Assembly: GCF_000315625.1 (NCBI RefSeq)
Contig: NW_005434666.1
Location: 1,073,806-1,137,805 of the forward strand
DNA length: 64,000 nt
Source of the DNA: Guillardia theta CCMP2712
Taxonomy: Eukaryota > Protista > Cryptophyta
Direction of reading: 5' to 3'
The notes beneath the pieces are model-generated. The model saw only the letters and a list, made by a program, of their open reading frames with translations, made no database searches and was not told the DNA's origin. This document shows, in pieces, positions 49,520 to 58,437 of this stretch; position 1 is the stretch's first letter; the number at the start of each line of letters is the position of its first letter. The position numbers and the translations under genes are program-made.

Positions 49520-52500
49520 TGTAATGACGTAGCAGTATCAAGTTAACTTGTTGTAATGTTTTCCATGTTATGTAAAGGTGATTAGGTAGAAAGTTGATAT
49601 CAATCGTAACTTCCGGCGACATTGCGGCATCGCCCATGTTGTTTGGTATCAAGGTGCTCCAGCGGTAAACATCAAGACTTGAAAGAGCGATATGAATTAA
49701 GATAGAAATAATTCACATGTGTTGAGACGAATAATAAGAGAAGAACACACAATGCAAGATCGCATCAGAAGCAATCTAACACTTGAAAATCTTTAATGAC
49801 ATCTCCCACTAATATACAAGAAAAACTCAAACCCACACGCTCATTTCTTTCTGCTTTCAAAACTCACCCGGCGAGTGGCCATAAAGAGGCCAATAACTGT
49901 AAAGCTGTAAGAGCCGAAGAGGGACGGGCGGGGGCAGGCAGAGAAGTCGGACAAAGAAAGCAGCAGCAAGCTAAGACAGGGAGAGAAAAGAGTATCTTAC
50001 GGATCTCTGCTGAGATAAAGTAGCGGAGCTGACGCATTAGGCGCGAATGGGTTGTACAGGGCATCACACGTGAAAGGATCTAAAGCGACGTGAGTGGTTA
50101 ACCAGCAGGAGAGAAAGGAAGGGCAGAAATAAGCAAGAAGGAGGGTGAGAGGGAGGGGAAAGGGAGGGAGGGAGAGAGCGGACGATCAGTGAAAGAGTGT
50201 GGCTCACTAGGTGTGAAAGCCTCCTCTGCCAATAAGATGCCCAACATCCTGACATTCAGCTCGGCATAGTATAAGGTGTCAAAGTCTTCAACTTGCCCCA
50301 GCTCTTCGACCACCTGCATCGTGACCATGTCAGGTCGCAGAGCAGGGAAGCCCAGACCAACATGCTGAGACGGGTCTTGCATCTTAAAGTCGATGTAGTT
50401 GTTGTAGGCGTCCTGGAAAGTCTCATTCCCTGGCTTTCCGTCGATCCACTTCTTCTCCAGCCCTCGTCTCCGCGTCGGTTGACCCGGTCGCCGCGCGTCG
50501 ATGTCAAGTCCCTGTCACGCTCTTGAGGCACTGAGAGCAGTTGGAGCAGGTTGGCAACGGCACCTTCTCACGCACGTACTTCTTGACCCTGACAAGGCTG
50601 TGCTCGTCGTAGAGACTCTTTGCCTGCCACATGAAATCTTCCATCTACCGCGGGGTCACTCACAATCAGCTTCATGTCTGAGTCCTTACGATGGCGCGCG
50701 CCATGTAAGCGTCATTATACTGCGACTCGTTTGCAAGGATCGAGATGTTGCAGCTGCAGGTCTGTCCGAAAGTTCCTGTCAAAACGAGTTTAGCACAAGA
50801 CACTCTTTGATAGATTGTGAGTAAAATTCACCTTTGGGGATCTTTGTGAAATCCAAATTTCCGTCTTGAATGCAAGGCAAAGGACAGTAGCCCTGTTTGA
50901 AGATTTCGTAGATTCTTCCAAACCTGGATCAAATTTAAAGGAATTGTCTCTCTCTGCTTCATCGCACCTGTTACAGAGTCTGTCTGGAAGTTGCAACGAG
51001 AAATCTGAAATGGTCAAGTCCACATCTATCGGGTTCGGTGAGATAGCTGCTCCGCACGCCTGGTTGCCTGCCCGATGATTTAGATGAAGTTGAAGGCAGA
51101 TGGAAGCACAGAGGGGAGGGGATGAGAAGAAAGAGAGAGATAGAGGAAACAGAAGGAAGAGAGGAGGGGGGGACGAAGAGATAGAAGAGATATGGAGGGA
51201 GGGTGCAAGCAAGAGAGAAGATGGCCAGCATGGGTATGAGGAATGTGGGAGGCATTACCGATGAGCTGAGAGATCGAATTTGGTGGACAACATTCTAGAA
51301 CGCCTGTTGAGAACTTTACAGACAACTTGCCCTGAGATCCATTTCGGGGTACCGTTTGCAGGATTCGCTCTAGTTGTCAACCCCAAGTTTGTCCATGAAT
51401 ACTGATGACTCATGAGTTCTGAAGTCTGGTTGCCAGGCTTTACAACACAAGACTGATTTCGAATCAAGTCGTTCAACTACAGACAGTCATTGCATCATGT
51501 AATCCAATAAATCACCGTCATACCAGAGGGCAAAAAATGCATTCTCCCGTCCGTGGAGACGTTACCTGCATTGCTTTAGAAACATCAAAAACCATAATAT
51601 TTACATATCCGCTCGCTTCGCATGGTTTCTGTAAACACAAACCAGTCTTGTTATCTAGTCCCCACTGGCATCCATTGTTGTTCACGAGCTCCGCAGCAAT
51701 GTCGCATTTGGATCCAAACTGACAAAATTTTCATGATCGCTGAGAGGATGAGACGAAGCCAAACCTTGTCGCCTCTCACGGACATGGAAAGCTACAAGGT
51801 TGGATCAGATGATCTCAATCAACATCTAAATGCATTCACACCCATCCAGCACCATTCTGAGGTATGTACTCGGAATCCTCGAGTTTGGATGCTGTGCCTG
51901 CAACCCCCGTCAGAGAAGAACACTGGACGAGAAAGCTTCCTGCGGGCCATTCTTCAGAGATCAGAGGAGCCATCCAGATCTCATCTTCGAGCAGTTGCGA
52001 GCGCGACATTCCTGTCCGAGCTCAGGTCTGCCTCAGAGTCTCTAGCAGTACCGCTAATTGATATCGTCAGCTCGTATCTTGTGTTTGTTTTCCACTTCGT
52101 CGATGACAAGAGTGCACAATTCGGCTGTCATGGTCAGTTAAGATTTGCGTTCAAGGTTGGACTACCACGCCGCCGCGAGGCTCCACCAGCTTGTGTGCAA
52201 AGGAAGAAGTCGTCGAAGATTCGTAAAAATTGTCGTATCTTCATGAAATCAGTCACTTGCTCTCCAGGTTTTTGTACGAGACCCACCTCATATATTGAAA
52301 CGACGACGCGTAAAATTCGTCATTCGAAAGAAAATCTGAAAGCTCCCCGAACTGTAACCTTCGTCAATTAGGACAAGGTGACGAGAAAAAAATCGATATG
52401 CGTTCCTGAATAGCTTCGTAAAGAAATTCAACTGTTGAGGAGCTCGTAGACGTCGATGTCTTGGGAGAAAAGAACTGCAGATTTGTACCCTGCTCGTACA

Positions 52501-53146
52501 CAACGTTCCCTTCGGTGTTGAACAAAGTTCCTCCCTCTACAACTTTCTCGACAGAGAACTGCATAAAGGATTAAGTTGAAGATAAGGCCCCCTCAACCTT
52601 GCACGTACCTGCATCTGCGATATGTTGATACCCGGTGTGGTCAAACAGAATAGAAGGGAGTCAAACTGATACAAGGAGGAGGACATCTCAATCTTCGTTA
52701 TCGTCTTGGTGCCATTCGCCTTGATAGCGCTCACCTGCCATGCGGCGTCATGCCTGAAGGAGTGGGAGCATGCGCACCCTGCACTGTTGATGCCCTTGAG
52801 GGTCCCACTCGACAGGTTTGCTGCATCTCAAGCAGAACTGCTGCTGGCAGTAAGCTGAAGCTGTCGGTACAGTGAAGTTGAAAGACTTCCAGGGCTGCAA
52901 GGAAAGTTCGTAGCTGCACGCAGATCAGACGAGGAGGTGAAAGTGAAGGCAAGTGGGACTGCAGGACGAGAAATGAAAGAAAAGCAAGGTTGAGCGGAGG
53001 CTTTGGAAACGCGAGAGGAAGAGGCAGCCATGAGACCTGATCACTTGCTGGTCCACATTCATCTGAGTCGACGAAGGATGCAAGCAGAAGAAGAGAACGA
53101 GGACCACGAGAGGAAGGCGACGAGGAAAGCAGAGCGGGAGAGACAT
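49520..53146 (-). CDS. Hypothetical secreted protein, multi-exon
   Basis: Signal-peptide-like MSLPLCFPRRLPLVVLVLFFCLHPSS and a chain of coding-like exons with GT-AG sites. No family recognised and boundaries are approximate. Confidence 0.5.
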
Positions 53147-53619
53147 GGCGGGCGGTATGGCGGGAGTAGTAGCAGTTTCTTGGAGAAAAATTGAGCTTTT
53201 AAAACTATTTTCCACCGGGGCCGGGCCGATCACCGGGTGGGTATCAGTGACTCGGATTCAATGTCCGACATTACAAGTCCGAGTGACTTGTTCAAGCCCG
53301 GCCCAGTACGGACTCACTGACTGGTCAGTGGCCCCCGCCGGCCCGTGCCTAGGTTAGATCTGAGGGGTGGGTGCAGATTGGCTTTTCTAAACTGACGGTT
53401 GCAGACAGGGGCGGGGGTCCGAGGTGGCACCGGTGATCAGTAGACTCGGACGACTACTGTAAGTAGTCACTTGATAGCGAGTACCAACCTACCCCACCTA
53501 CCTGCCCTCGTCCCTCTATCCGAGACTCCCTCCATAGTAACTTCCGTAACGCCGACCTCATCGCGCACTTCCCCACTCTTTCCCTCTTGTCCTTCTCCTC
53601 CTCCTGTTAATCCTTCCTC

Positions 53620-55311
53620 CTGTGCTTTCCTCTCTCGATGCAGAAGCATCGTTGAAAGCCCTCGAGTGGGAGATTCGAAGCCTTAAGCAGAACCTCTCTG
53701 CAACCCTAAGCGAGCTCCGCACTCTCAACTCTTCCGTCTCTTCCATGCCGCAGCTGCCCTGGGGCAACCTCATTCTCCCGTACATCTGGTCTCAAATAAA
53801 CTACAAGGAGTCTTCTGCTACGACATGAGCTGTGTCTCACATTCAGCCTGCAAGGTATGAGGTCTGGGTTGGCCCGCAGGGCTCTTGCCACTCCTGCCGT
53901 CAACCAGTGCCAGTGCATCGGAGGTAAGGCTTGTGCATGGGGGGTAGTGCCGGTAGGGCTTGTGCGTGAGGAGGGTAGCGCTAGCTCGAGCCGTGTGTGA
54001 CGAGCAGGATGGTGCGCAGGGTTCTACCTGGATGTGGGCCCTCCTGCTCCTCCTGCCCATCCGGTCTCATGTCGCCCTTCGCGAGCTCCTCGCTGCTTGA
54101 TGTTTCTCGGAAGCATCGCAGGAGAGTCATGCTCAGACGTCTGCGCGTCAAAACATCTGACATGCGTCGACGAGGCCCGGCCCGTGATCACCGGCAGTCA
54201 CTTGGTCACTCTTCTCGCCGCATGGAGCATCACTGTCTCCCAGTATGGCGGCACTGACAGCGTGGACGCCCCATCCTACAACCCCACCACGGGTCAAGCC
54301 TTCTACCGTTACGGCTTGCCCGGCAAGTGCAAAGCCACCAATGCAAACACCGTTAGAGTGTGTCGATGCACGTGCGCTGACAACCAGTACGGTAAGCGCC
54401 GTCCTTCCTCGCTCACAACCACCTCTCACGCGCCATGCAGGCATGTCAGGCAACTGCTCGTCATGCCCAGCCAACAGTCTGTCGTCCTTTCAAGCTCCGG
54501 ATCGCTCGAGCTGCATGTGCAACTTCGGTGATACAACTTCTACATGACACTGCGAGCGCTGACGAGGCCATGTGCTGGTGTTGCAGGTTACTTCCTCAAT
54601 GCGTCGGAAGGAGGCTGCAGCCCCTGCCCAGGTGGCACGTACGCGAGGAGGATGGAGTTTGTCGAGCAAGACTTCGGCAAGGACGGGATCGTGGGATGGC
54701 AGGGGACGGATCAAACGTCGAGCTGTGGGGCCTATGGCTCAGTGCTTGGGGGGCTCAACGTGCTGGCCGAGTACTCGAGTGTGACCAAGACGTTCACCGG
54801 CTTGTGCCCGCATGGCTTTGTCTACCTCTGGATGAGAGTGGTGCTCATCGACGTGGCTCAGCCCGTGACGCTACGTATGTACGTGAACCGTCAGCTACGT
54901 ATGTACGTGAACCGTCAGCTACGTATGTACGTGAACCGTCAGCTACGTATGTACGTGAACCGTCAGGAGGTCTGGAACGAGACGATCTCGGCTGTCTTTC
55001 CCGTGTCGTCGAGGTGCGGGAGCAGCAATGGGGACGGGCTGATCTCTGGATTTAAGCGATTGTATCACACGGAAGACTACATAGAGGTGGGTATCCGAGT
55101 AGACTACGACTACCTGCAAGTGGATGCTTCCATCGCTAAGACGTTCTGGGGGCTCAAGGAAGTTTCTCTCATACTCCAATGCGCGAGCTCGACTTCAGCT
55201 GACTGCAGCATGACGAAACCGTTGGAACAGTCATGTTCGGATGTGACAGGAAGCGGAGGGAGATGCACGAGGTCAGGCAACTACCTCTTAGTATGTCCAC
55301 TACTCCAATGA
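53620..55311 (+). CDS. Cys-rich (EGF/TNFR-like) extracellular-type protein, multi-exon
   Basis: GESCSDVC, CRCTCADNQY, CSSCPANS...CMCN..GYF...CSPCPGGTY. The start is unclear. Confidence 0.55.
54871..54966 (+). repeat. 24-bp tandem repeat x4 (LRMYVNRQ)
   Basis: Four exact copies of CTACGTATGTACGTGAACCGTCAG. Confidence 0.95.
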
Positions 55312-55892
55312 CGCTCTGGGATGGTGGGATGCGGAGTCAAAGTGCAGTAGCATGGGCATTGGAGGACATCCGATCGATGATCTCGCCTACTTCCCGGATG
55401 CAGCAACGCAAAGAGCAGTAAAATCGAGTCACTGAGTGTGGGAGGCCCGCGGCGAGTTCAAGCTGAGCCTGCCCGGCCCCGCCCGGCCACTCGGCGGCAG
55501 TGACCGGGTGACTCGGCGGTGAGACTGCGTTTCAACGTTTCAAAGTTTCAAAGTTTCAAAGTTTCAAAGTTTCGCTGCTAGTCCGAGGGATCATTTGACG
55601 TCAGCATGGCAGAAGCAATGAAGCGACGAAGGTACGAGAAGAGGAGAATATGGTAGAGACGTAGCAGAGACAGCGGAGATAACATACCAGGAAGGCTAAG
55701 AGTAGACACGAGCAAGATGCAGAGAGATATGTGTCATAGCTAATCACGGCGTTCTTGTTCTCTAAACTCACCTTGGTGCTTGGATAGGTGATGTTTGCTG
55801 CAAGCACTTATCTTTTAGAGGCCATTGTGAGCAAAACTGTTCATATTTTCTCCTCATATTGATACAAAGCTATTTCAGGATTGATTGAAGGC

Positions 55893-57521
55893 ATGCAGTC
55901 TGCATTGTTTCCATTATTTGCAGCGTGTGTTGTGTACTTATTCCCCTTGCCATCTTGTGCCATCTCAAAATCTGCATTCGGCAATCTTCCTCCGGCAACA
56001 GTTTCACGATTTGTACCTGAAACAAGTCAGACATGGAGAGGAAATGATGCTCTGCGCTTTTCCTCCACGTACGCGCAAGGCACAACAGTGCGAGGATTTC
56101 TATGCTCGGATTTTGTGCAAGTGGGGCCCTATGGATCCTTTTCTCCTTTTTGCTGTGTGACCTCTGTGTCGGGCATGTTTGACGGTTCAGGAATTGCTGG
56201 TTTCGCTCCTCCTCCGAAGAAAGATCCCAACTCACAGTTCCCTCCTCTTCCTCCTCTCTTCATCAGCCTGGCAAACATCACGGGTCAAGACAGCAGCGCC
56301 AGGGATCGCCCTGTTCCAAAACCTGTCTTCTCATTTCTATCATCTCCTGATGCAGCTGAGCTGCAGTTGGGAGGGTATGACGAGACTTCTGTGTCAGGAA
56401 GGATGAGATACATTAGCTCACTTTCGAGGTTTGCATACGTGGTTCCCATACAGTCCATGTCGATAGGAAATACTCCCATTCTTATCAAGAACAGCAACGA
56501 GCAGCTGGCAAAAAAGTTTCAAGCTGGTGCAATATTGGATAGCGGCACAAGTTGTATTTGCCTCCCTGACAATGACATGCACGGCTATGCTAAACAATCA
56601 CCATACAAGAATTTCAAGGATTCATGGCAGAAAGAAAGTGGAGCTGACATCGAGATCGTTATGGGAACAGGAAGTAAGACTTTTAGTGTGATGATTCCTT
56701 CAAGTGTGTGGCTGCCTGGTATGCAGGAGGTTCAGGGTTGCCTGATGAAAGATTGTCCTAACGATAAAATTATCCTCGGCGACTGGCTGTTTCAGTCGTG
56801 GCTCGTGCTCTTTGACTTGGGGCCAACGGCTTCTGGGAGGACACCACGGATAGGCCTGGCTCCTAGGAAAGATGATTACAATGTGGGTAAGAAGTACTTT
56901 CTGCATGAACACTCGTCCGGGGTAACAAAAGTGGCGATGAAGCGAGAGAAAGTGACGAAACGGTACAACACTCCTGACCTGCCAGGATACTCAGCATCAA
57001 AGGAAGAAGTTCCAGATGTCAAGCTCTCTATCGTTCGAGATCTGTATTATCTTCTCCCCGTAATGGTTGGACATCCAGCACAGCGCTTTGATGTGGTGTT
57101 CGACACTGGATCTTCCTTCTTTGGTCTAGTTACTGCTCCTGCTGATTCTGAAGTGGTTCAAGAAGCACTCGTCAAGCTAGGTAAGAATGGCGACGGTAAG
57201 CTCAGCAAGCAGCTGCAACGAGAGGTGGATGAAGCTGAGAGCGTCAAGAAGAGACTTGATGCACAGGTGAGAACATGTCCCTGGTCCTCCGATGCTGAGA
57301 AAACATTTGCAGGACAATGGACCGCTGCGAGAGAGAAAAATGACTGGCCCTGGGCCAGGGATGGTGTGCTCTAGTTGTTGAGATGGAGTTACTCTTGACG
57401 TGAAACGCAGGTCGGGATGGGAGTGATCGGGCTGGTGTGGGGAGTGCTTGTGATCGGAGGCGTTTGTGCCGTCCAGATCGTCAGAAGGCGCCAGCGAAAA
57501 GGAGCTGGCGACTGGTTTTGA
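55893..57521 (+). CDS. Pepsin-family (A1) aspartic protease with signal peptide and C-terminal TM helix, lobe motifs in permuted order
   Basis: Signal peptide MQSALFPLFAACVVYLFPLPSCA, flap FSSTYAQG, AILDSGTS, IILGDWLF, RIGLA, then YYLLPVMVGHPAQRFDVVFDTGSS. The final exon reads VGMGVIGLVWGVLVIGGVCAVQIVRRRQRK. Confidence 0.88.
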
Positions 57522-57823
57522 ACAAACATAGATTAGATTCTGTCAAGAGGGGTTGAAAATTGTTTCTAGATGATATAAACTGAAGAAACAAGGATCCAGA
57601 TGACATAAACCGTAGAACAAATTATTAGGATTGTCATGATAGGTTATTTTGTTTCTACATAAATGGTAGGGGCTTGTTGTTCAAATACTTTACAATCACT
57701 CAGATGATGATACACCTCACGCTTGCGGCTAAGAATAACAAAAGAATAGGAGGATGGCAAGTTGAGTCTTCGAGCTTGAAACGAGCGTGCCTTTCGTTCC
57801 CGGGCACCTTGTGGTGATTGTGC

Positions 57824-58437
57824 TTAGAAGTCCAAGATCTCGATCTCGAATTTCAGGTCTGCATTGGGAGGGATGAGGTTGCCTGCCCCGTTTGCTCCGT
57901 AAGCATAGTCAGCTGAGCAATGCAAGGTAGCAGTCTGGGCGATGGCTGCGTAAGGCCAGGGACAACGAAAACAAAAACAAACCTGTCCTTTACTCATCTG
58001 CTTGATGCCTTCATCCCAGCACTTGATAACTTCTCCTACTCCTGTACAACACGTGTAAGATTTGTCATGAGGCCAGACAGATACCCAAGGTGAAGATGAA
58101 GGGCTGATCCCTGTCCTTGGAAGAGTCAAATTTCAATCCGTTGTCTGCTAGATATCCAGTGTAATGCACAGTGACGCTCTGTAAACAGCATCACAGAAGG
58201 AGTTCGACCAAATATCAAGCAAGATTAATCAAGAGTACCTTGCCAACAGAAGGAAAAGTTTTTCCATCTCCGGCATGCTTTGTTTCTATGGTGACCCCTG
58301 AGAATCTCAGTCAGAGTGTCTGGAAAAACTTTTGCCTACGAAGCCTCACCTCCATGTACAAGATTCACAAGAAAAAGATTTATGAGTAAATAGATGAATG
58401 AAACCCCTTGGCTGCAGTGCAATCTGGATACAACCAT
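57824..58437 (-). CDS. FKBP: FKBP-type peptidyl-prolyl isomerase with N-terminal signal-peptide-like extension, 5 exons
   Basis: [47 protein letters not shown] and [14 protein letters not shown]. Confidence 0.93.

What the first reader, a model, noticed from the sequence alone, without database searches (positions are those of the whole stretch)
55893..57521. Apparently circularly permuted, membrane-anchored pepsin-family protease with an internal propeptide-like segment
Seen: after the signal peptide the protein starts directly with the region that normally follows the first catalytic motif (RFVPETSQTW...FSSTYAQG flap...GFLCSDFV...SGIAGFA). It then runs through the C-lobe (AILDSGTS, Asp codon at 56538; IILGDWL; RIGLA). 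Only after that does it show a basic propeptide-like stretch (GVTKVAMKREKVTKR) and the canonical mature N-terminus (DLYYLLPVMVGHPAQRFDVVFDTGSS, Asp codon at 57102). All of this is in one open frame, followed by a coiled stalk, a TM helix and RRRQRK. Known: in A1 proteases the order is pro - Y...G.P.Q.F.V.FDTGSS - flap Tyr - DSGT - ILGD - IGLA. Inference: the first ~40 mature residues and the pro-segment moved to the C-terminus, keeping both catalytic Asp and the flap Tyr. Cleaving the internal pro-segment would give a two-chain enzyme held at the membrane through the strand that carries one catalytic Asp. I know of no described natural permutant of this kind.
Basis: partly seen in the sequence, partly recalled or inferred. 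Interest (0 to 1): 0.88.

Follow-up and report, generated by a model that had tools for sequence, protein, structure and literature searches.

The report
Naturally circularly permuted pepsin-family protease
This expressed gene of the cryptophyte alga Guillardia theta encodes a membrane-anchored pepsin-type protease whose first ~45 residues, including one of its two catalytic aspartates, have moved to the end of the chain; it belongs to a large conserved family with this layout that I did not find described in the literature searched.

Summary
Spliced transcripts from three studies define a 511-aa protein (CDS 55893-57266, 57313-57363, 57411-57521). Its order is: signal peptide, pepsin body (flap Tyr60, D216-S-G-T, ILGD, IGLA), 47-aa linker, old N-terminal hairpin (GHPAQRFDVVFD404TGSS), helical stalk, TM helix, basic tail.

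- **Non-colinear match:** the family profile hits human pepsin in two stretches, body to pepsin 48-319 and hairpin to pepsin 3-42. The cut lies in the Cys45-Cys50 loop.
- **No upstream coding exon:** two upstream exons exist but are 5'UTR, with an in-frame TGA before the ATG.
- **Models:** AF2 gives a pepsin fold (Z 21 to porcine pepsin) with a confident hairpin. Body plus hairpin as separate chains dock at ipSAE 0.90 (best control 0.02), with T405 against D216/S217.
- **Paralogs:** all 21 PF00026 loci of this genome have body first; 18 show the hairpin downstream. No canonical-order gene was found.
- **Family:** 128 proteins share the order, from six cryptophyte genera, Ancoracysta and one Cochliopodium transcript. 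Both Asp are kept in 120 of 121.
- **Literature:** no prior description found.

Homology of the linker to A1 propeptides and two-chain maturation remain unproven. Enzyme activity is inferred.

The parts
55588..55631 (+). 5'UTR exon A (5' end approximate, from transcript contig ends); holds a 9-codon uORF
   Evidence: joints 55629->55786 (cut +2) in X1, X2, X21; sequence
55788..55826 (+). 5'UTR exon B; holds a 13-codon uORF; its last base starts the in-frame TGA that closes the frame upstream of the ATG
   Evidence: joints 55826->55879 in X1, X2, X10
55893..55961 (+). Start codon and predicted signal peptide (aa 1-23; hydrophobic core, small residues S-C-A before the likely cut)
   Evidence: P0001; read from sequence; orthologues also start with hydrophobic leaders. 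No signal-peptide predictor was available
56004..56894 (+). Pepsin 'body', aa 38-334. It corresponds to pepsin residues about 48-326: the rest of the N-lobe including the flap, plus the whole C-lobe
   Evidence: structural alignment of model 35-326 to pepsin 51/54-326, Z 21, rmsd 2.2-2.6 over about 245 residues
56070..56072 (+). Flap tyrosine Y60 (pepsin Tyr75 equivalent)
   Evidence: alignment; Y in 67 and F in 17 of 91 family members
56538..56549 (+). Second catalytic motif D216-S-G-T (pepsin Asp215 equivalent)
   Evidence: D in 120 of 121
56895..56996 (+). Linker, aa 335-368. Contains the basic stretch GVTKVAMKREKVTKRY with a predicted beta-strand at 345-353. Propeptide-like by motif only
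   Evidence: hhalign does not reach it; no PF07966
56997..57140 (+). Relocated old N-terminus, aa 369-416. It corresponds to pepsin residues about 1-42: the N-terminal strand plus the beta-hairpin carrying the first catalytic motif
   Evidence: pepsin 3-42; hhalign Prob 99, E 2.9e-18, 46 columns; pLDDT 77-90; docks on the body with ipSAE 0.90 against best control 0.02
57102..57113 (+). First catalytic motif D404-T-G-S (pepsin Asp32 equivalent)
   Evidence: D in 128 of 128 and T in 126 of 128; T405 contacts D216/S217 in the complex model
57150..57266 (+). Helical stalk (aa 420-458), up to the end of the large exon
   Evidence: H420-432, H439-457, low pLDDT; joint
57267..57312 (+). Intron (GT..AG, 46 nt)
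   Evidence: P0001 reads ...LDAQ|DNGPL
57313..57363 (+). Short coding exon (aa 459-475)
57364..57410 (+). Intron (GT..AG, 47 nt)
57411..57482 (+). Transmembrane helix (aa 476-499)
   Evidence: H478-504; read from sequence. A TM segment after the hairpin is found in 55 of the 97 B-h proteins of the first batch, the rest being mostly fragments
57483..57521 (+). Cytosolic tail RRRQRKGAGDWF plus stop codon. The tail is nearly identical in orthologues
57522..57594 (+). 3'UTR up to a poly(A) site (a longer form runs to about 57673)
   Evidence: A16 loose end at 57594 in raw RNA reads; X1 contig reaches 57673

Best explanation
The gene encodes a real, expressed, naturally circularly permuted member of the pepsin (MEROPS A1 / Pfam PF00026) family in the cryptophyte alga Guillardia theta.

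Compared with pepsin, the chain is cut in the Cys45-Cys50 loop. The protein starts, after a signal peptide, at the equivalent of pepsin residue about 48. It runs through the flap and the whole C-lobe, and then crosses a 47-residue linker from the old C-terminus to the old N-terminus. It ends the catalytic domain with the old N-terminal strand and the hairpin that carries the Asp32-equivalent (D404).

This hairpin folds back into the N-lobe beside the I-A-G-F strand, so that D404-T405 faces D216-S217 and rebuilds the usual two-aspartate site. That placement is predicted, not measured. A helical stalk, one TM helix and a short basic tail follow, so the catalytic domain sits on the luminal or extracellular side as in a type I membrane protein. 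This topology is inferred from the signal peptide, the TM helix and the positive-inside tail.

The enzyme is most likely an active acid endopeptidase, because both catalytic motifs and the flap are under strong conservation. Activity itself is inferred.

The layout most likely arose once, by tandem duplication and fusion of an A1 gene followed by loss of both ends. This is the standard route to permutation and is also an inference. The family then expanded: at least 18 permuted paralogues exist in this genome, and no canonical-order A1 gene was detectable.
For: - **Sequence order:** two non-colinear PF00026 matches. The family profile against human pepsin matches pepsin 3-42 to the C-terminal segment and pepsin 48-319 to the body. 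hhalign of the linker+hairpin region against canonical zymogen N-termini gives Prob 99, E 2.9e-18.
- **Real transcript:** MMETSP transcript P0001 is 100% identical over 511 aa and marked complete. Spliced contigs from three studies and raw RNA reads show four GT..AG introns and a poly(A) tail. The upstream exons are non-coding, with an in-frame stop.
- **Fold:** AF2 gives pTM 0.72, body pLDDT mostly above 85 and hairpin pLDDT 77-90. VIA-align gives Z 21.0, rmsd 2.4 over 246 residues to porcine pepsin, with model 35-326 aligned to pepsin 51/54-326 in most top rows. Foldseek tops are plasmepsin X, prorenin and BACE1.
- **Active-site completion:** body 26-340 plus hairpin 376-420 as separate chains give ipSAE 0.90 against a best control of 0.02. 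The three runs share at least 93% of contacts, and partner pLDDT is at least 77. By the tool's calibration, this mark was reached by 51 of 78 solved complexes and 2 of 108 mismatched pairs. D404 touches residues 102-105, and T405 touches D216/S217.
- **Not a one-off:** all 21 PF00026 loci of the genome show the body first, and 18 of them show the hairpin downstream. A canonical diatom pepsin query finds nothing else.
- **Family:** 128 B-h proteins were found, while every canonical control (cathepsin E, plant aspartic proteinases, diatom pepsin) scored h-B with the same two HMMs. D216 and D404 are both present in 120 of 121 sequences, and no member has a DTG-like motif upstream of the body.
- **Single origin:** a tree of body regions needs only one change of order (UFboot 92 / SH-aLRT 57). 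The core cryptophyte clade has support 100/99.
- **Independent genome:** Baffinella frigidus P0203 has the same order.
Against: - No biochemical or structural measurement exists; the packing of the hairpin rests on predictors that know the pepsin fold. The complex tool itself warns that a pass may reflect memory of the fold.
- I had no model coordinates, so the D216-D404 distance was not measured.
- Support for a single origin is moderate (SH-aLRT 57), and several divergent members sit on long branches.
- Three paralogues (at L016-L018) have degenerate catalytic motifs, so not every family member is an enzyme.
- The absence of a canonical A1 gene rests on six-frame searches that can miss genes with many short exons.
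Confidence: 0.85

Rival explanations
1. Zymogen-like variant of the best explanation. The linker (aa 335-382) is a retained A1 prosegment that blocks the site until it is cut. Cutting leaves a two-chain enzyme whose small chain (hairpin, stalk and TM helix) tethers the large chain to the membrane.
For: The basic stretch at 343-356 resembles the K-(V/I)-P-L-x-K/R start of A1 propeptides, and similar motifs recur in paralogues. AF2 predicts strand 345-353 with pLDDT about 89, followed by a disordered 357-382. A basic pair before Tyr357 is conserved in orthologues. Body and hairpin are predicted to bind as separate chains. From my own knowledge, two-chain A1 enzymes exist (cathepsin D, cardosin A).
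Against: There is no PF07966 match, and hhalign does not extend into the stretch. Other subfamilies have linkers of only 21-30 residues with no room for a prosegment, so it cannot be a general feature. No cleavage data exist.
Confidence: 0.3
2. The protein is a non-catalytic pepsin-fold protein (pseudoprotease, binding protein or inhibitor-like, as in the xylanase-inhibitor TAXI type) that merely keeps the motifs.
For: Weak TAXi_N/TAXi_C Pfam matches below cut-off. Some paralogues have lost the motifs but keep the layout. Activity was never measured.
Against: D-S-G-T, D-T-G-S, the flap Tyr/Phe and both hydrophobic-hydrophobic-Gly strands are invariant or nearly so across sequences only 24-30% identical. 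That is hard to explain without catalysis. PF00026 scores far above the TAXi models.
Confidence: 0.1
3. The hairpin does not fold back into its own chain but completes the N-lobe of a neighbouring molecule, giving a domain-swapped dimer or oligomer on the membrane.
For: The hairpin is predicted to bind the body in trans, so swapping is physically possible. The linker is partly disordered.
Against: The AF2 monomer places the hairpin confidently within one chain. Linkers as short as 21-30 residues occur in the family and would suffice for closure within one chain, because the old termini lie in the same central sheet of pepsin (my own knowledge). There is no evidence for dimers.
Confidence: 0.05
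4. Artefact: mis-assembly or read-through of two tandem canonical genes, or a pseudogene.
For: Tandem A1 arrays exist elsewhere and are sometimes merged into h-B-h-B gene models.
Against: There is one continuous ORF with an in-frame stop upstream, and identical spliced transcripts in three studies. The same order is seen at 18 loci of this genome, in a second cryptophyte genome and in many transcriptomes. Residue conservation is strong.
Confidence: 0.01

Closest known systems
Pepsin / cathepsin D / cathepsin E (canonical MEROPS A1, Pfam PF00026)
   Same: Same fold (Z about 21, rmsd about 2.4 to porcine and human pepsin). Same two catalytic motifs, flap Tyr and hydrophobic-hydrophobic-Gly strands. 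24-25% identity in structural alignment. These are the best sequence matches among solved structures.
   Different: The order of the chain differs: pepsin residues about 1-42 come after residue about 326 instead of before residue 48. The Cys45-Cys50 loop is gone. There is no recognisable N-terminal propeptide. A TM anchor is added. On the family body HMM the permuted proteins score at least 200 bits and canonical ones at most 85 bits.
BACE1/BACE2 (memapsins); also plasmepsin V and Toxoplasma ASP5, which I recall from my own knowledge as A1 proteases with a C-terminal TM anchor
   Same: Overall design of signal peptide, luminal A1 domain, single C-terminal TM helix and short cytosolic tail. BACE1 and BACE2 are among the fold and sequence matches. 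This suggests work as a membrane-tethered processing protease.
   Different: Those enzymes have the canonical order and an N-terminal prosegment. No orthology is indicated. Here the TM helix follows the strand that carries the first catalytic Asp.
Swaposin (plant-specific insert) of plant aspartic proteinases
   Same: It is the circular permutation usually cited in connection with A1 proteases (papers found).
   Different: There the permuted unit is an inserted saposin-like domain and the protease fold itself is canonical. Plant enzymes scored h-B. Here the catalytic fold itself is permuted.
Two-chain A1 enzymes (mature cathepsin D, cardosin A)
   Same: They show that an A1 active site can be held together by two non-covalently associated chains, each carrying one Asp. 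This would apply if the linker here is cut. (My own knowledge; cardosin A appears as a 239-aa chain.)
   Different: Their chains arise by cutting a canonical-order precursor at other loops. Cleavage has not been shown for this protein.

Membership tests
Pepsin family (MEROPS A1 / Pfam PF00026) | Significant match to the family profile above the curated cut-off | tested here: met
   76.2 bits against a cut-off of 19.9, E 4e-21. The C-terminal piece alone scores 22.8 bits.
Pepsin family (MEROPS A1 / Pfam PF00026) | Two catalytic Asp in D-T/S-G-T/S motifs, one per lobe | tested here: met
   D216-S-G-T and D404-T-G-S. They align to pepsin Asp215 and Asp32. Both are present in 120 of 121 family members.
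Pepsin family (MEROPS A1 / Pfam PF00026) | Bilobal pepsin fold | tested here: met
   Predicted model only. Z 21.0, rmsd 2.4, 246 residues aligned to porcine pepsin 6xct. Foldseek E 7e-12 to plasmepsin X.
Pepsin family (MEROPS A1 / Pfam PF00026) | Flap with conserved Tyr (pepsin Tyr75) | tested here: met
   Y60 lies in S-T-Y-A-Q-G-T. Y in 67 and F in 17 of 91 members.
Pepsin family (MEROPS A1 / Pfam PF00026) | Canonical colinear order: first catalytic motif near the N-terminus | tested here: not met
   Order is body then hairpin. No DTG-like motif lies upstream of the body in any of 128 members. This is the point of difference; homology to the family is not in doubt.
Pepsin family (MEROPS A1 / Pfam PF00026) | N-terminal prosegment (Pfam PF07966 A1_Propeptide) making a zymogen | tested here: inconclusive
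   No prosegment follows the signal peptide; the body starts at aa 38. The internal basic stretch has no PF07966 hit and no hhalign extension. Only motif-level likeness remains.
Pepsin family (MEROPS A1 / Pfam PF00026) | Pepstatin-sensitive endopeptidase activity at acid pH | not testable with these tools
   Needs an enzyme assay.
Natural circular permutant (general criteria) | Two complementary, non-overlapping, non-colinear matches to one domain, with neither part duplicated in the protein | tested here: met
   Pepsin 48-319 then pepsin 3-42, each present once. Canonical controls give the opposite order with the same HMMs.
Natural circular permutant (general criteria) | The relocated segment takes its original place in the fold | tested here: met
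   Prediction only. ipSAE 0.90 against best control 0.02. Contacts are D404 with 102-105 and T405 with D216/S217. Hairpin pLDDT is 77-90. No coordinates were available to measure distances.
Membrane-anchored A1 proteases (BACE / plasmepsin V type) | Signal peptide, luminal catalytic domain, one C-terminal TM helix, short cytosolic tail | tested here: met
   Read from sequence and AF2 helix 478-504. No dedicated topology predictor was available.
Membrane-anchored A1 proteases (BACE / plasmepsin V type) | Orthology to BACE or plasmepsin V | tested here: not met
   Best solved-structure sequence matches are pepsin, renin and cathepsin E. BACE2 is weaker. The family forms its own group apart from all canonical sequences sampled.

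The most novel reading that the evidence does not exclude
In cryptophytes the ordinary pepsin topology has been entirely replaced by a permuted one that arose once, early enough to be shared with the distant predator Ancoracysta (Provora). The linker is a retained prosegment, so the enzymes are internal-propeptide zymogens. They would mature into two-chain proteases tethered to the membrane through the small chain that carries one catalytic Asp. Such an activation and anchoring mode is not known for any aspartic protease.
Probability: 0.25. Interest if true: 0.88.

Novelty: new variant of a known kind. Interest (0 to 1): 0.76.

Why it matters
The pepsin fold is one of the most studied enzyme folds (pepsin, renin, BACE, plasmepsins). 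As far as my searches and memory go, no natural circular permutant of it has been described.

- **Protein evolution:** this is a large, conserved and apparently active family, not a single odd gene. It gives a clean natural case of permutation inside a lobe rather than between the two lobes of a duplicated fold.
- **Protein engineering:** it shows that the Asp32 hairpin can be supplied from the C-terminus. It also defines a permissive cut site, the 45-50 loop.
- **Annotation:** colinear aligners and domain architectures under-describe these proteins. Public records call them only 'Peptidase A1 domain-containing protein' or 'hypothetical protein'.
- **Cryptophyte biology:** all detectable A1 proteases of Guillardia are of this membrane-tethered permuted type. 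This invites work on what they process in the secretory system.

Tried and rejected
- **Upstream coding exon supplying a DTG:** rejected. Transcripts do have two upstream exons, but these carry only tiny uORFs and an in-frame TGA.
- **Assembly or gene-model artefact:** rejected.
- **Tandem h-B-h-B proteins as evolutionary intermediates:** these turned up among the representative hits. The named ones are from fungi, an ant, a nematode and a green alga, and most look like merged models of tandem genes that rank high through summed scores. I drew no conclusion from them.
- **Homology of the linker to A1 propeptides:** not shown by Pfam or hhalign.
- **Canonical A1 gene in this genome:** none found with PF00026 or with a diatom pepsin query.
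- **Relatives of the Cochliopodium permutant P0155:** only canonical pepsins at 26-30% identity were found, so its relation to the cryptophyte family, shared or independent origin, stays open.
- **Literature:** five searches gave no paper on a permuted A1 protease. The terms were circular permutation or circularly permuted or permuted with aspartic protease, pepsin or aspartic peptidase; Guillardia theta with aspartic protease; and cryptophyte with pepsin-like. The 2026 CIRPIN survey mentions aspartic protease only in a reference on the plant saposin-like insert.
- **ESM Atlas feature search:** added nothing on taxonomy.
- **Model coordinates:** not available in the sandbox, so inter-Asp distances and the position of strand 345-353 could not be measured.
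- **Earlier scan notes:** a look-up by place gave nothing. By words it showed that first-stage readers flagged five other permuted A1 genes on other pieces of this genome.
Full report
**What is there.** The window is part of contig C8 of an 87.1-Mb, 669-contig assembly. A paralogue on C9 is named GUITHDRAFT_161360 of Guillardia theta CCMP2712, and its contig length (1,138,462) equals that of C9. So the organism is the cryptophyte alga Guillardia theta.

A 497-codon open frame runs 55881-57374. The real gene model comes from transcripts. Spliced contigs of three independent studies (X1, X2, X10) and raw RNA reads (X21) show the following:
- two short upstream exons (about 55588-55631 and 55788-55826);
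- the main exon from 55879;
- introns 57267-57312 and 57364-57410, all GT..AG;
- a poly(A) tail at about 57594.

The resulting CDS (55893-57266, 57313-57363, 57411-57521) encodes 511 aa. It is identical to a 'complete' MMETSP transcript ORF, P0001.

In the spliced mRNA the codon made of t55826 + ga55879-80 is an in-frame TGA. The upstream ATGs open only 9- and 13-codon uORFs. So no upstream exon can supply a normal N-terminus.

**The order of parts.** Pfam PF00026 matches residues 38-311 to profile positions 43-307. Separately it matches residues about 386-410 to positions 2-26.

A profile of 24 family members against PDB sequences hits human pepsin 3A in two non-colinear stretches. Pepsin 3-42 aligns to the C-terminal segment (i-E 5.6e-8), and pepsin 48-319 aligns to the body (i-E 6e-16). 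The break therefore falls in pepsin's Cys45-Cys50 loop.

hhalign of the linker+hairpin region against canonical zymogen N-termini (cathepsins E and D, diatom and oomycete pepsins) aligns 46 columns (residues 369-414) with Prob 99 and E 2.9e-18. These columns are the mature N-terminal strand plus the D-T-G-S hairpin. The alignment does not reach the basic stretch GVTKVAMKREKVTKRY, and Pfam's A1 propeptide model does not hit it. The 'propeptide-like' label therefore rests only on two things. One is a K-(V/I)-(P/A)-x-x-(K/R) motif that recurs in paralogues. The other is a confidently predicted beta-strand at 345-353.

**Structure.** AF2 with the family alignment gives pTM 0.72. The body has pLDDT mostly above 85, residues 357-382 are disordered, and the hairpin strands (384-392, 397-404, 410-414) have pLDDT 77-90. 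A helical stalk and a TM helix at 478-504 follow.

The model matches only A1 proteases. Foldseek's top hits are plasmepsin X, prorenin, plasmepsin II and BACE1. VIA-align gives Z 21.0, rmsd 2.4 over 246 residues to porcine pepsin. In most top rows model residues 35-326 are laid on pepsin 51/54-326, which means a colinear aligner covers everything except pepsin's first 50 residues.

To test whether the relocated piece completes the fold, I submitted body (26-340) and hairpin (376-420) as two chains. The result was ipSAE 0.90 against 0.02 for the best of three controls. The runs agree in at least 93% of contacts, and partner pLDDT is at least 77. By the tool's calibration, this mark was reached by 51 of 78 solved complexes and 2 of 108 mismatched pairs.

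The contacts are those expected of a canonical site. D404 lies against I-A-G-F (102-105, the pepsin I-L-G-L strand). T405 lies against D216/S217, a geometry like the 'fireman's grip'. The old N-strand lies against residues 148-159 of the central sheet.

This is a prediction by a model that knows the pepsin fold. It shows compatibility, not proof. I had no coordinates to measure distances.

**Not a single odd gene.** A PF00026 search of the whole genome gave 29 matches at 21 loci. I built two HMMs from the family alignment, one for the body and one for the linker plus hairpin. With them, 18 loci show the body upstream and the hairpin downstream on the same strand. Three loci show only the body within the fetched stretch. 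None shows the canonical order. A canonical diatom pepsin used as query finds only these same loci, and weakly.

Three paralogues (L016-L018) have degenerate catalytic motifs and may be pseudoproteases.

**The wider family.** Homologues at 24-72% identity come from Hanusia phi, Rhodomonas, Hemiselmis andersenii, Cryptomonas curvata and Baffinella frigidus (a second genome assembly), and from many metagenomes. All have the same order and usually a TM helix after the hairpin.

An exhaustive profile search found 154 clusters (at 50% identity) with E<=1e-30. Over all fetched proteins, 128 are body-then-hairpin. Every named canonical A1 (cathepsin E, plant aspartic proteinases, diatom and oomycete pepsins) is hairpin-then-body with the same HMMs. 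Body scores also show a clear gap, at least 200 bits against at most 85 bits.

Conservation in the permuted set:

| Position | Count |
|---|---|
| D404 | 128 of 128 |
| T405 | 126 of 128 |
| D216 | 120 of 121 |
| Flap position 60 | Y in 67 and F in 17 of 91 |
| DTG-like motif upstream of the body | 0 of 128 |

A maximum-likelihood tree of body regions (46 permuted, 33 canonical) needs one change of order (UFboot 92 / SH-aLRT 57, and 92% of bootstrap trees). The core cryptophyte clade has support 100/99.

Outside cryptophytes, the same layout occurs in a complete transcript ORF of Ancoracysta twista (Provora). It also occurs in a single, very divergent transcript of the amoebozoan Cochliopodium minus. 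The nearest relatives of that transcript are canonical pepsins, so it may be an independent event.

**How it most likely works.**
- *Shown:* the order of segments, expression and splicing, family-wide conservation of catalytic residues, and a predicted pepsin fold.
- *Inferred:* after signal-peptide removal the chain folds as a normal two-lobed A1 domain. The last three N-lobe strands are added from the C-terminal side through a linker that joins the old termini. The enzyme faces the lumen or the outside and is held by the TM helix. It acts as a membrane-tethered endopeptidase, in design like BACE or plasmepsin V.
- *Open:* whether the linker acts as an internal prosegment and is cut to give a two-chain enzyme. 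Subfamilies with linkers of only 21-30 residues show this cannot be general.
- *Origin:* duplication, fusion and loss of both ends is the textbook route and fits a single change on the tree. I found no convincing intermediate. The tandem h-B-h-B proteins in the hit list are mostly merged gene models from unrelated taxa.

**Known or new.** Five full-text searches found no report of a permuted pepsin-family protease. The only link between 'circular permutation' and aspartic proteases in that literature is the swaposin insert of plant enzymes. Public records label these proteins 'Peptidase A1 domain-containing protein' or 'hypothetical protein'. First-stage readers of this scan flagged five further paralogues on other pieces of the same genome, in line.

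I file this as a new variant of a known kind. It is homologous to A1 and probably works like A1, but its chain topology does not appear in that literature.

**Verdict.** Two-chain maturation and the propeptide identity of the linker are open. Interest 0.76.

Noticed in passing
window 55529-55573: An (GTTTCAAA)x5.6 microsatellite lies just upstream of the transcript's 5' end. Transcript contigs of another gene share about 34 nt with it, seen as loose ends at 55539 and 55572 in X1, X2 and X10.
   Followed up: no
window 55606-55635 and 55791-55880 (spliced): The 5'UTR is split by two introns and carries two short uORFs of 9 and 13 codons ahead of the main ATG. This could regulate translation.
   Followed up: partly
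window 57674-58400, minus strand: The neighbouring gene is convergent and has at least four short CT..AC (that is, GT..AG) introns. It encodes an FKBP-type peptidyl-prolyl isomerase (PF00254, E 2e-13) and is expressed. Its 3' end abuts the protease's long 3'UTR form at 57673/57674.
   Followed up: partly
window 54870-54966: A perfect 24-bp x4 tandem repeat encodes PSATYVRE x4 in one frame. It sits inside long ORFs (54034-55311) that have no Pfam match and no transcript coverage in the runs laid.
   Followed up: no
L016 (G000:C226:48000-53000), L017 (C9:1005000-1010000), L018 (C19:208000-213000): These paralogues keep the body-first layout (in L016 and L018 with a recognisable hairpin remnant downstream), but their catalytic motifs have decayed. 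L016 has D-T-S-A and D-T-S-T, L017 has D-I-N-S and D-T-P-V, and L018 has D-F-S-Q. They are possible pseudoproteases.
   Followed up: partly
L001 (G000:C15:748232-752050) and L003 (C111:192027-195614): Two paralogues have long N-terminal extensions (about 260-370 residues, partly charged and coiled-looking) before the permuted protease body.
   Followed up: no
P0155 (Cochliopodium minus transcript) and P0030 (Ancoracysta twista transcript): The same body-hairpin-TM layout occurs outside cryptophytes. The amoebozoan copy has a D-T-G-T C-lobe motif and is nearest to canonical pepsins, so it may be an independent permutation.
   Followed up: partly
window 52500-53166, minus strand: Another expressed gene lies here, with three short CT..AC introns. 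It was not examined.
   Followed up: no
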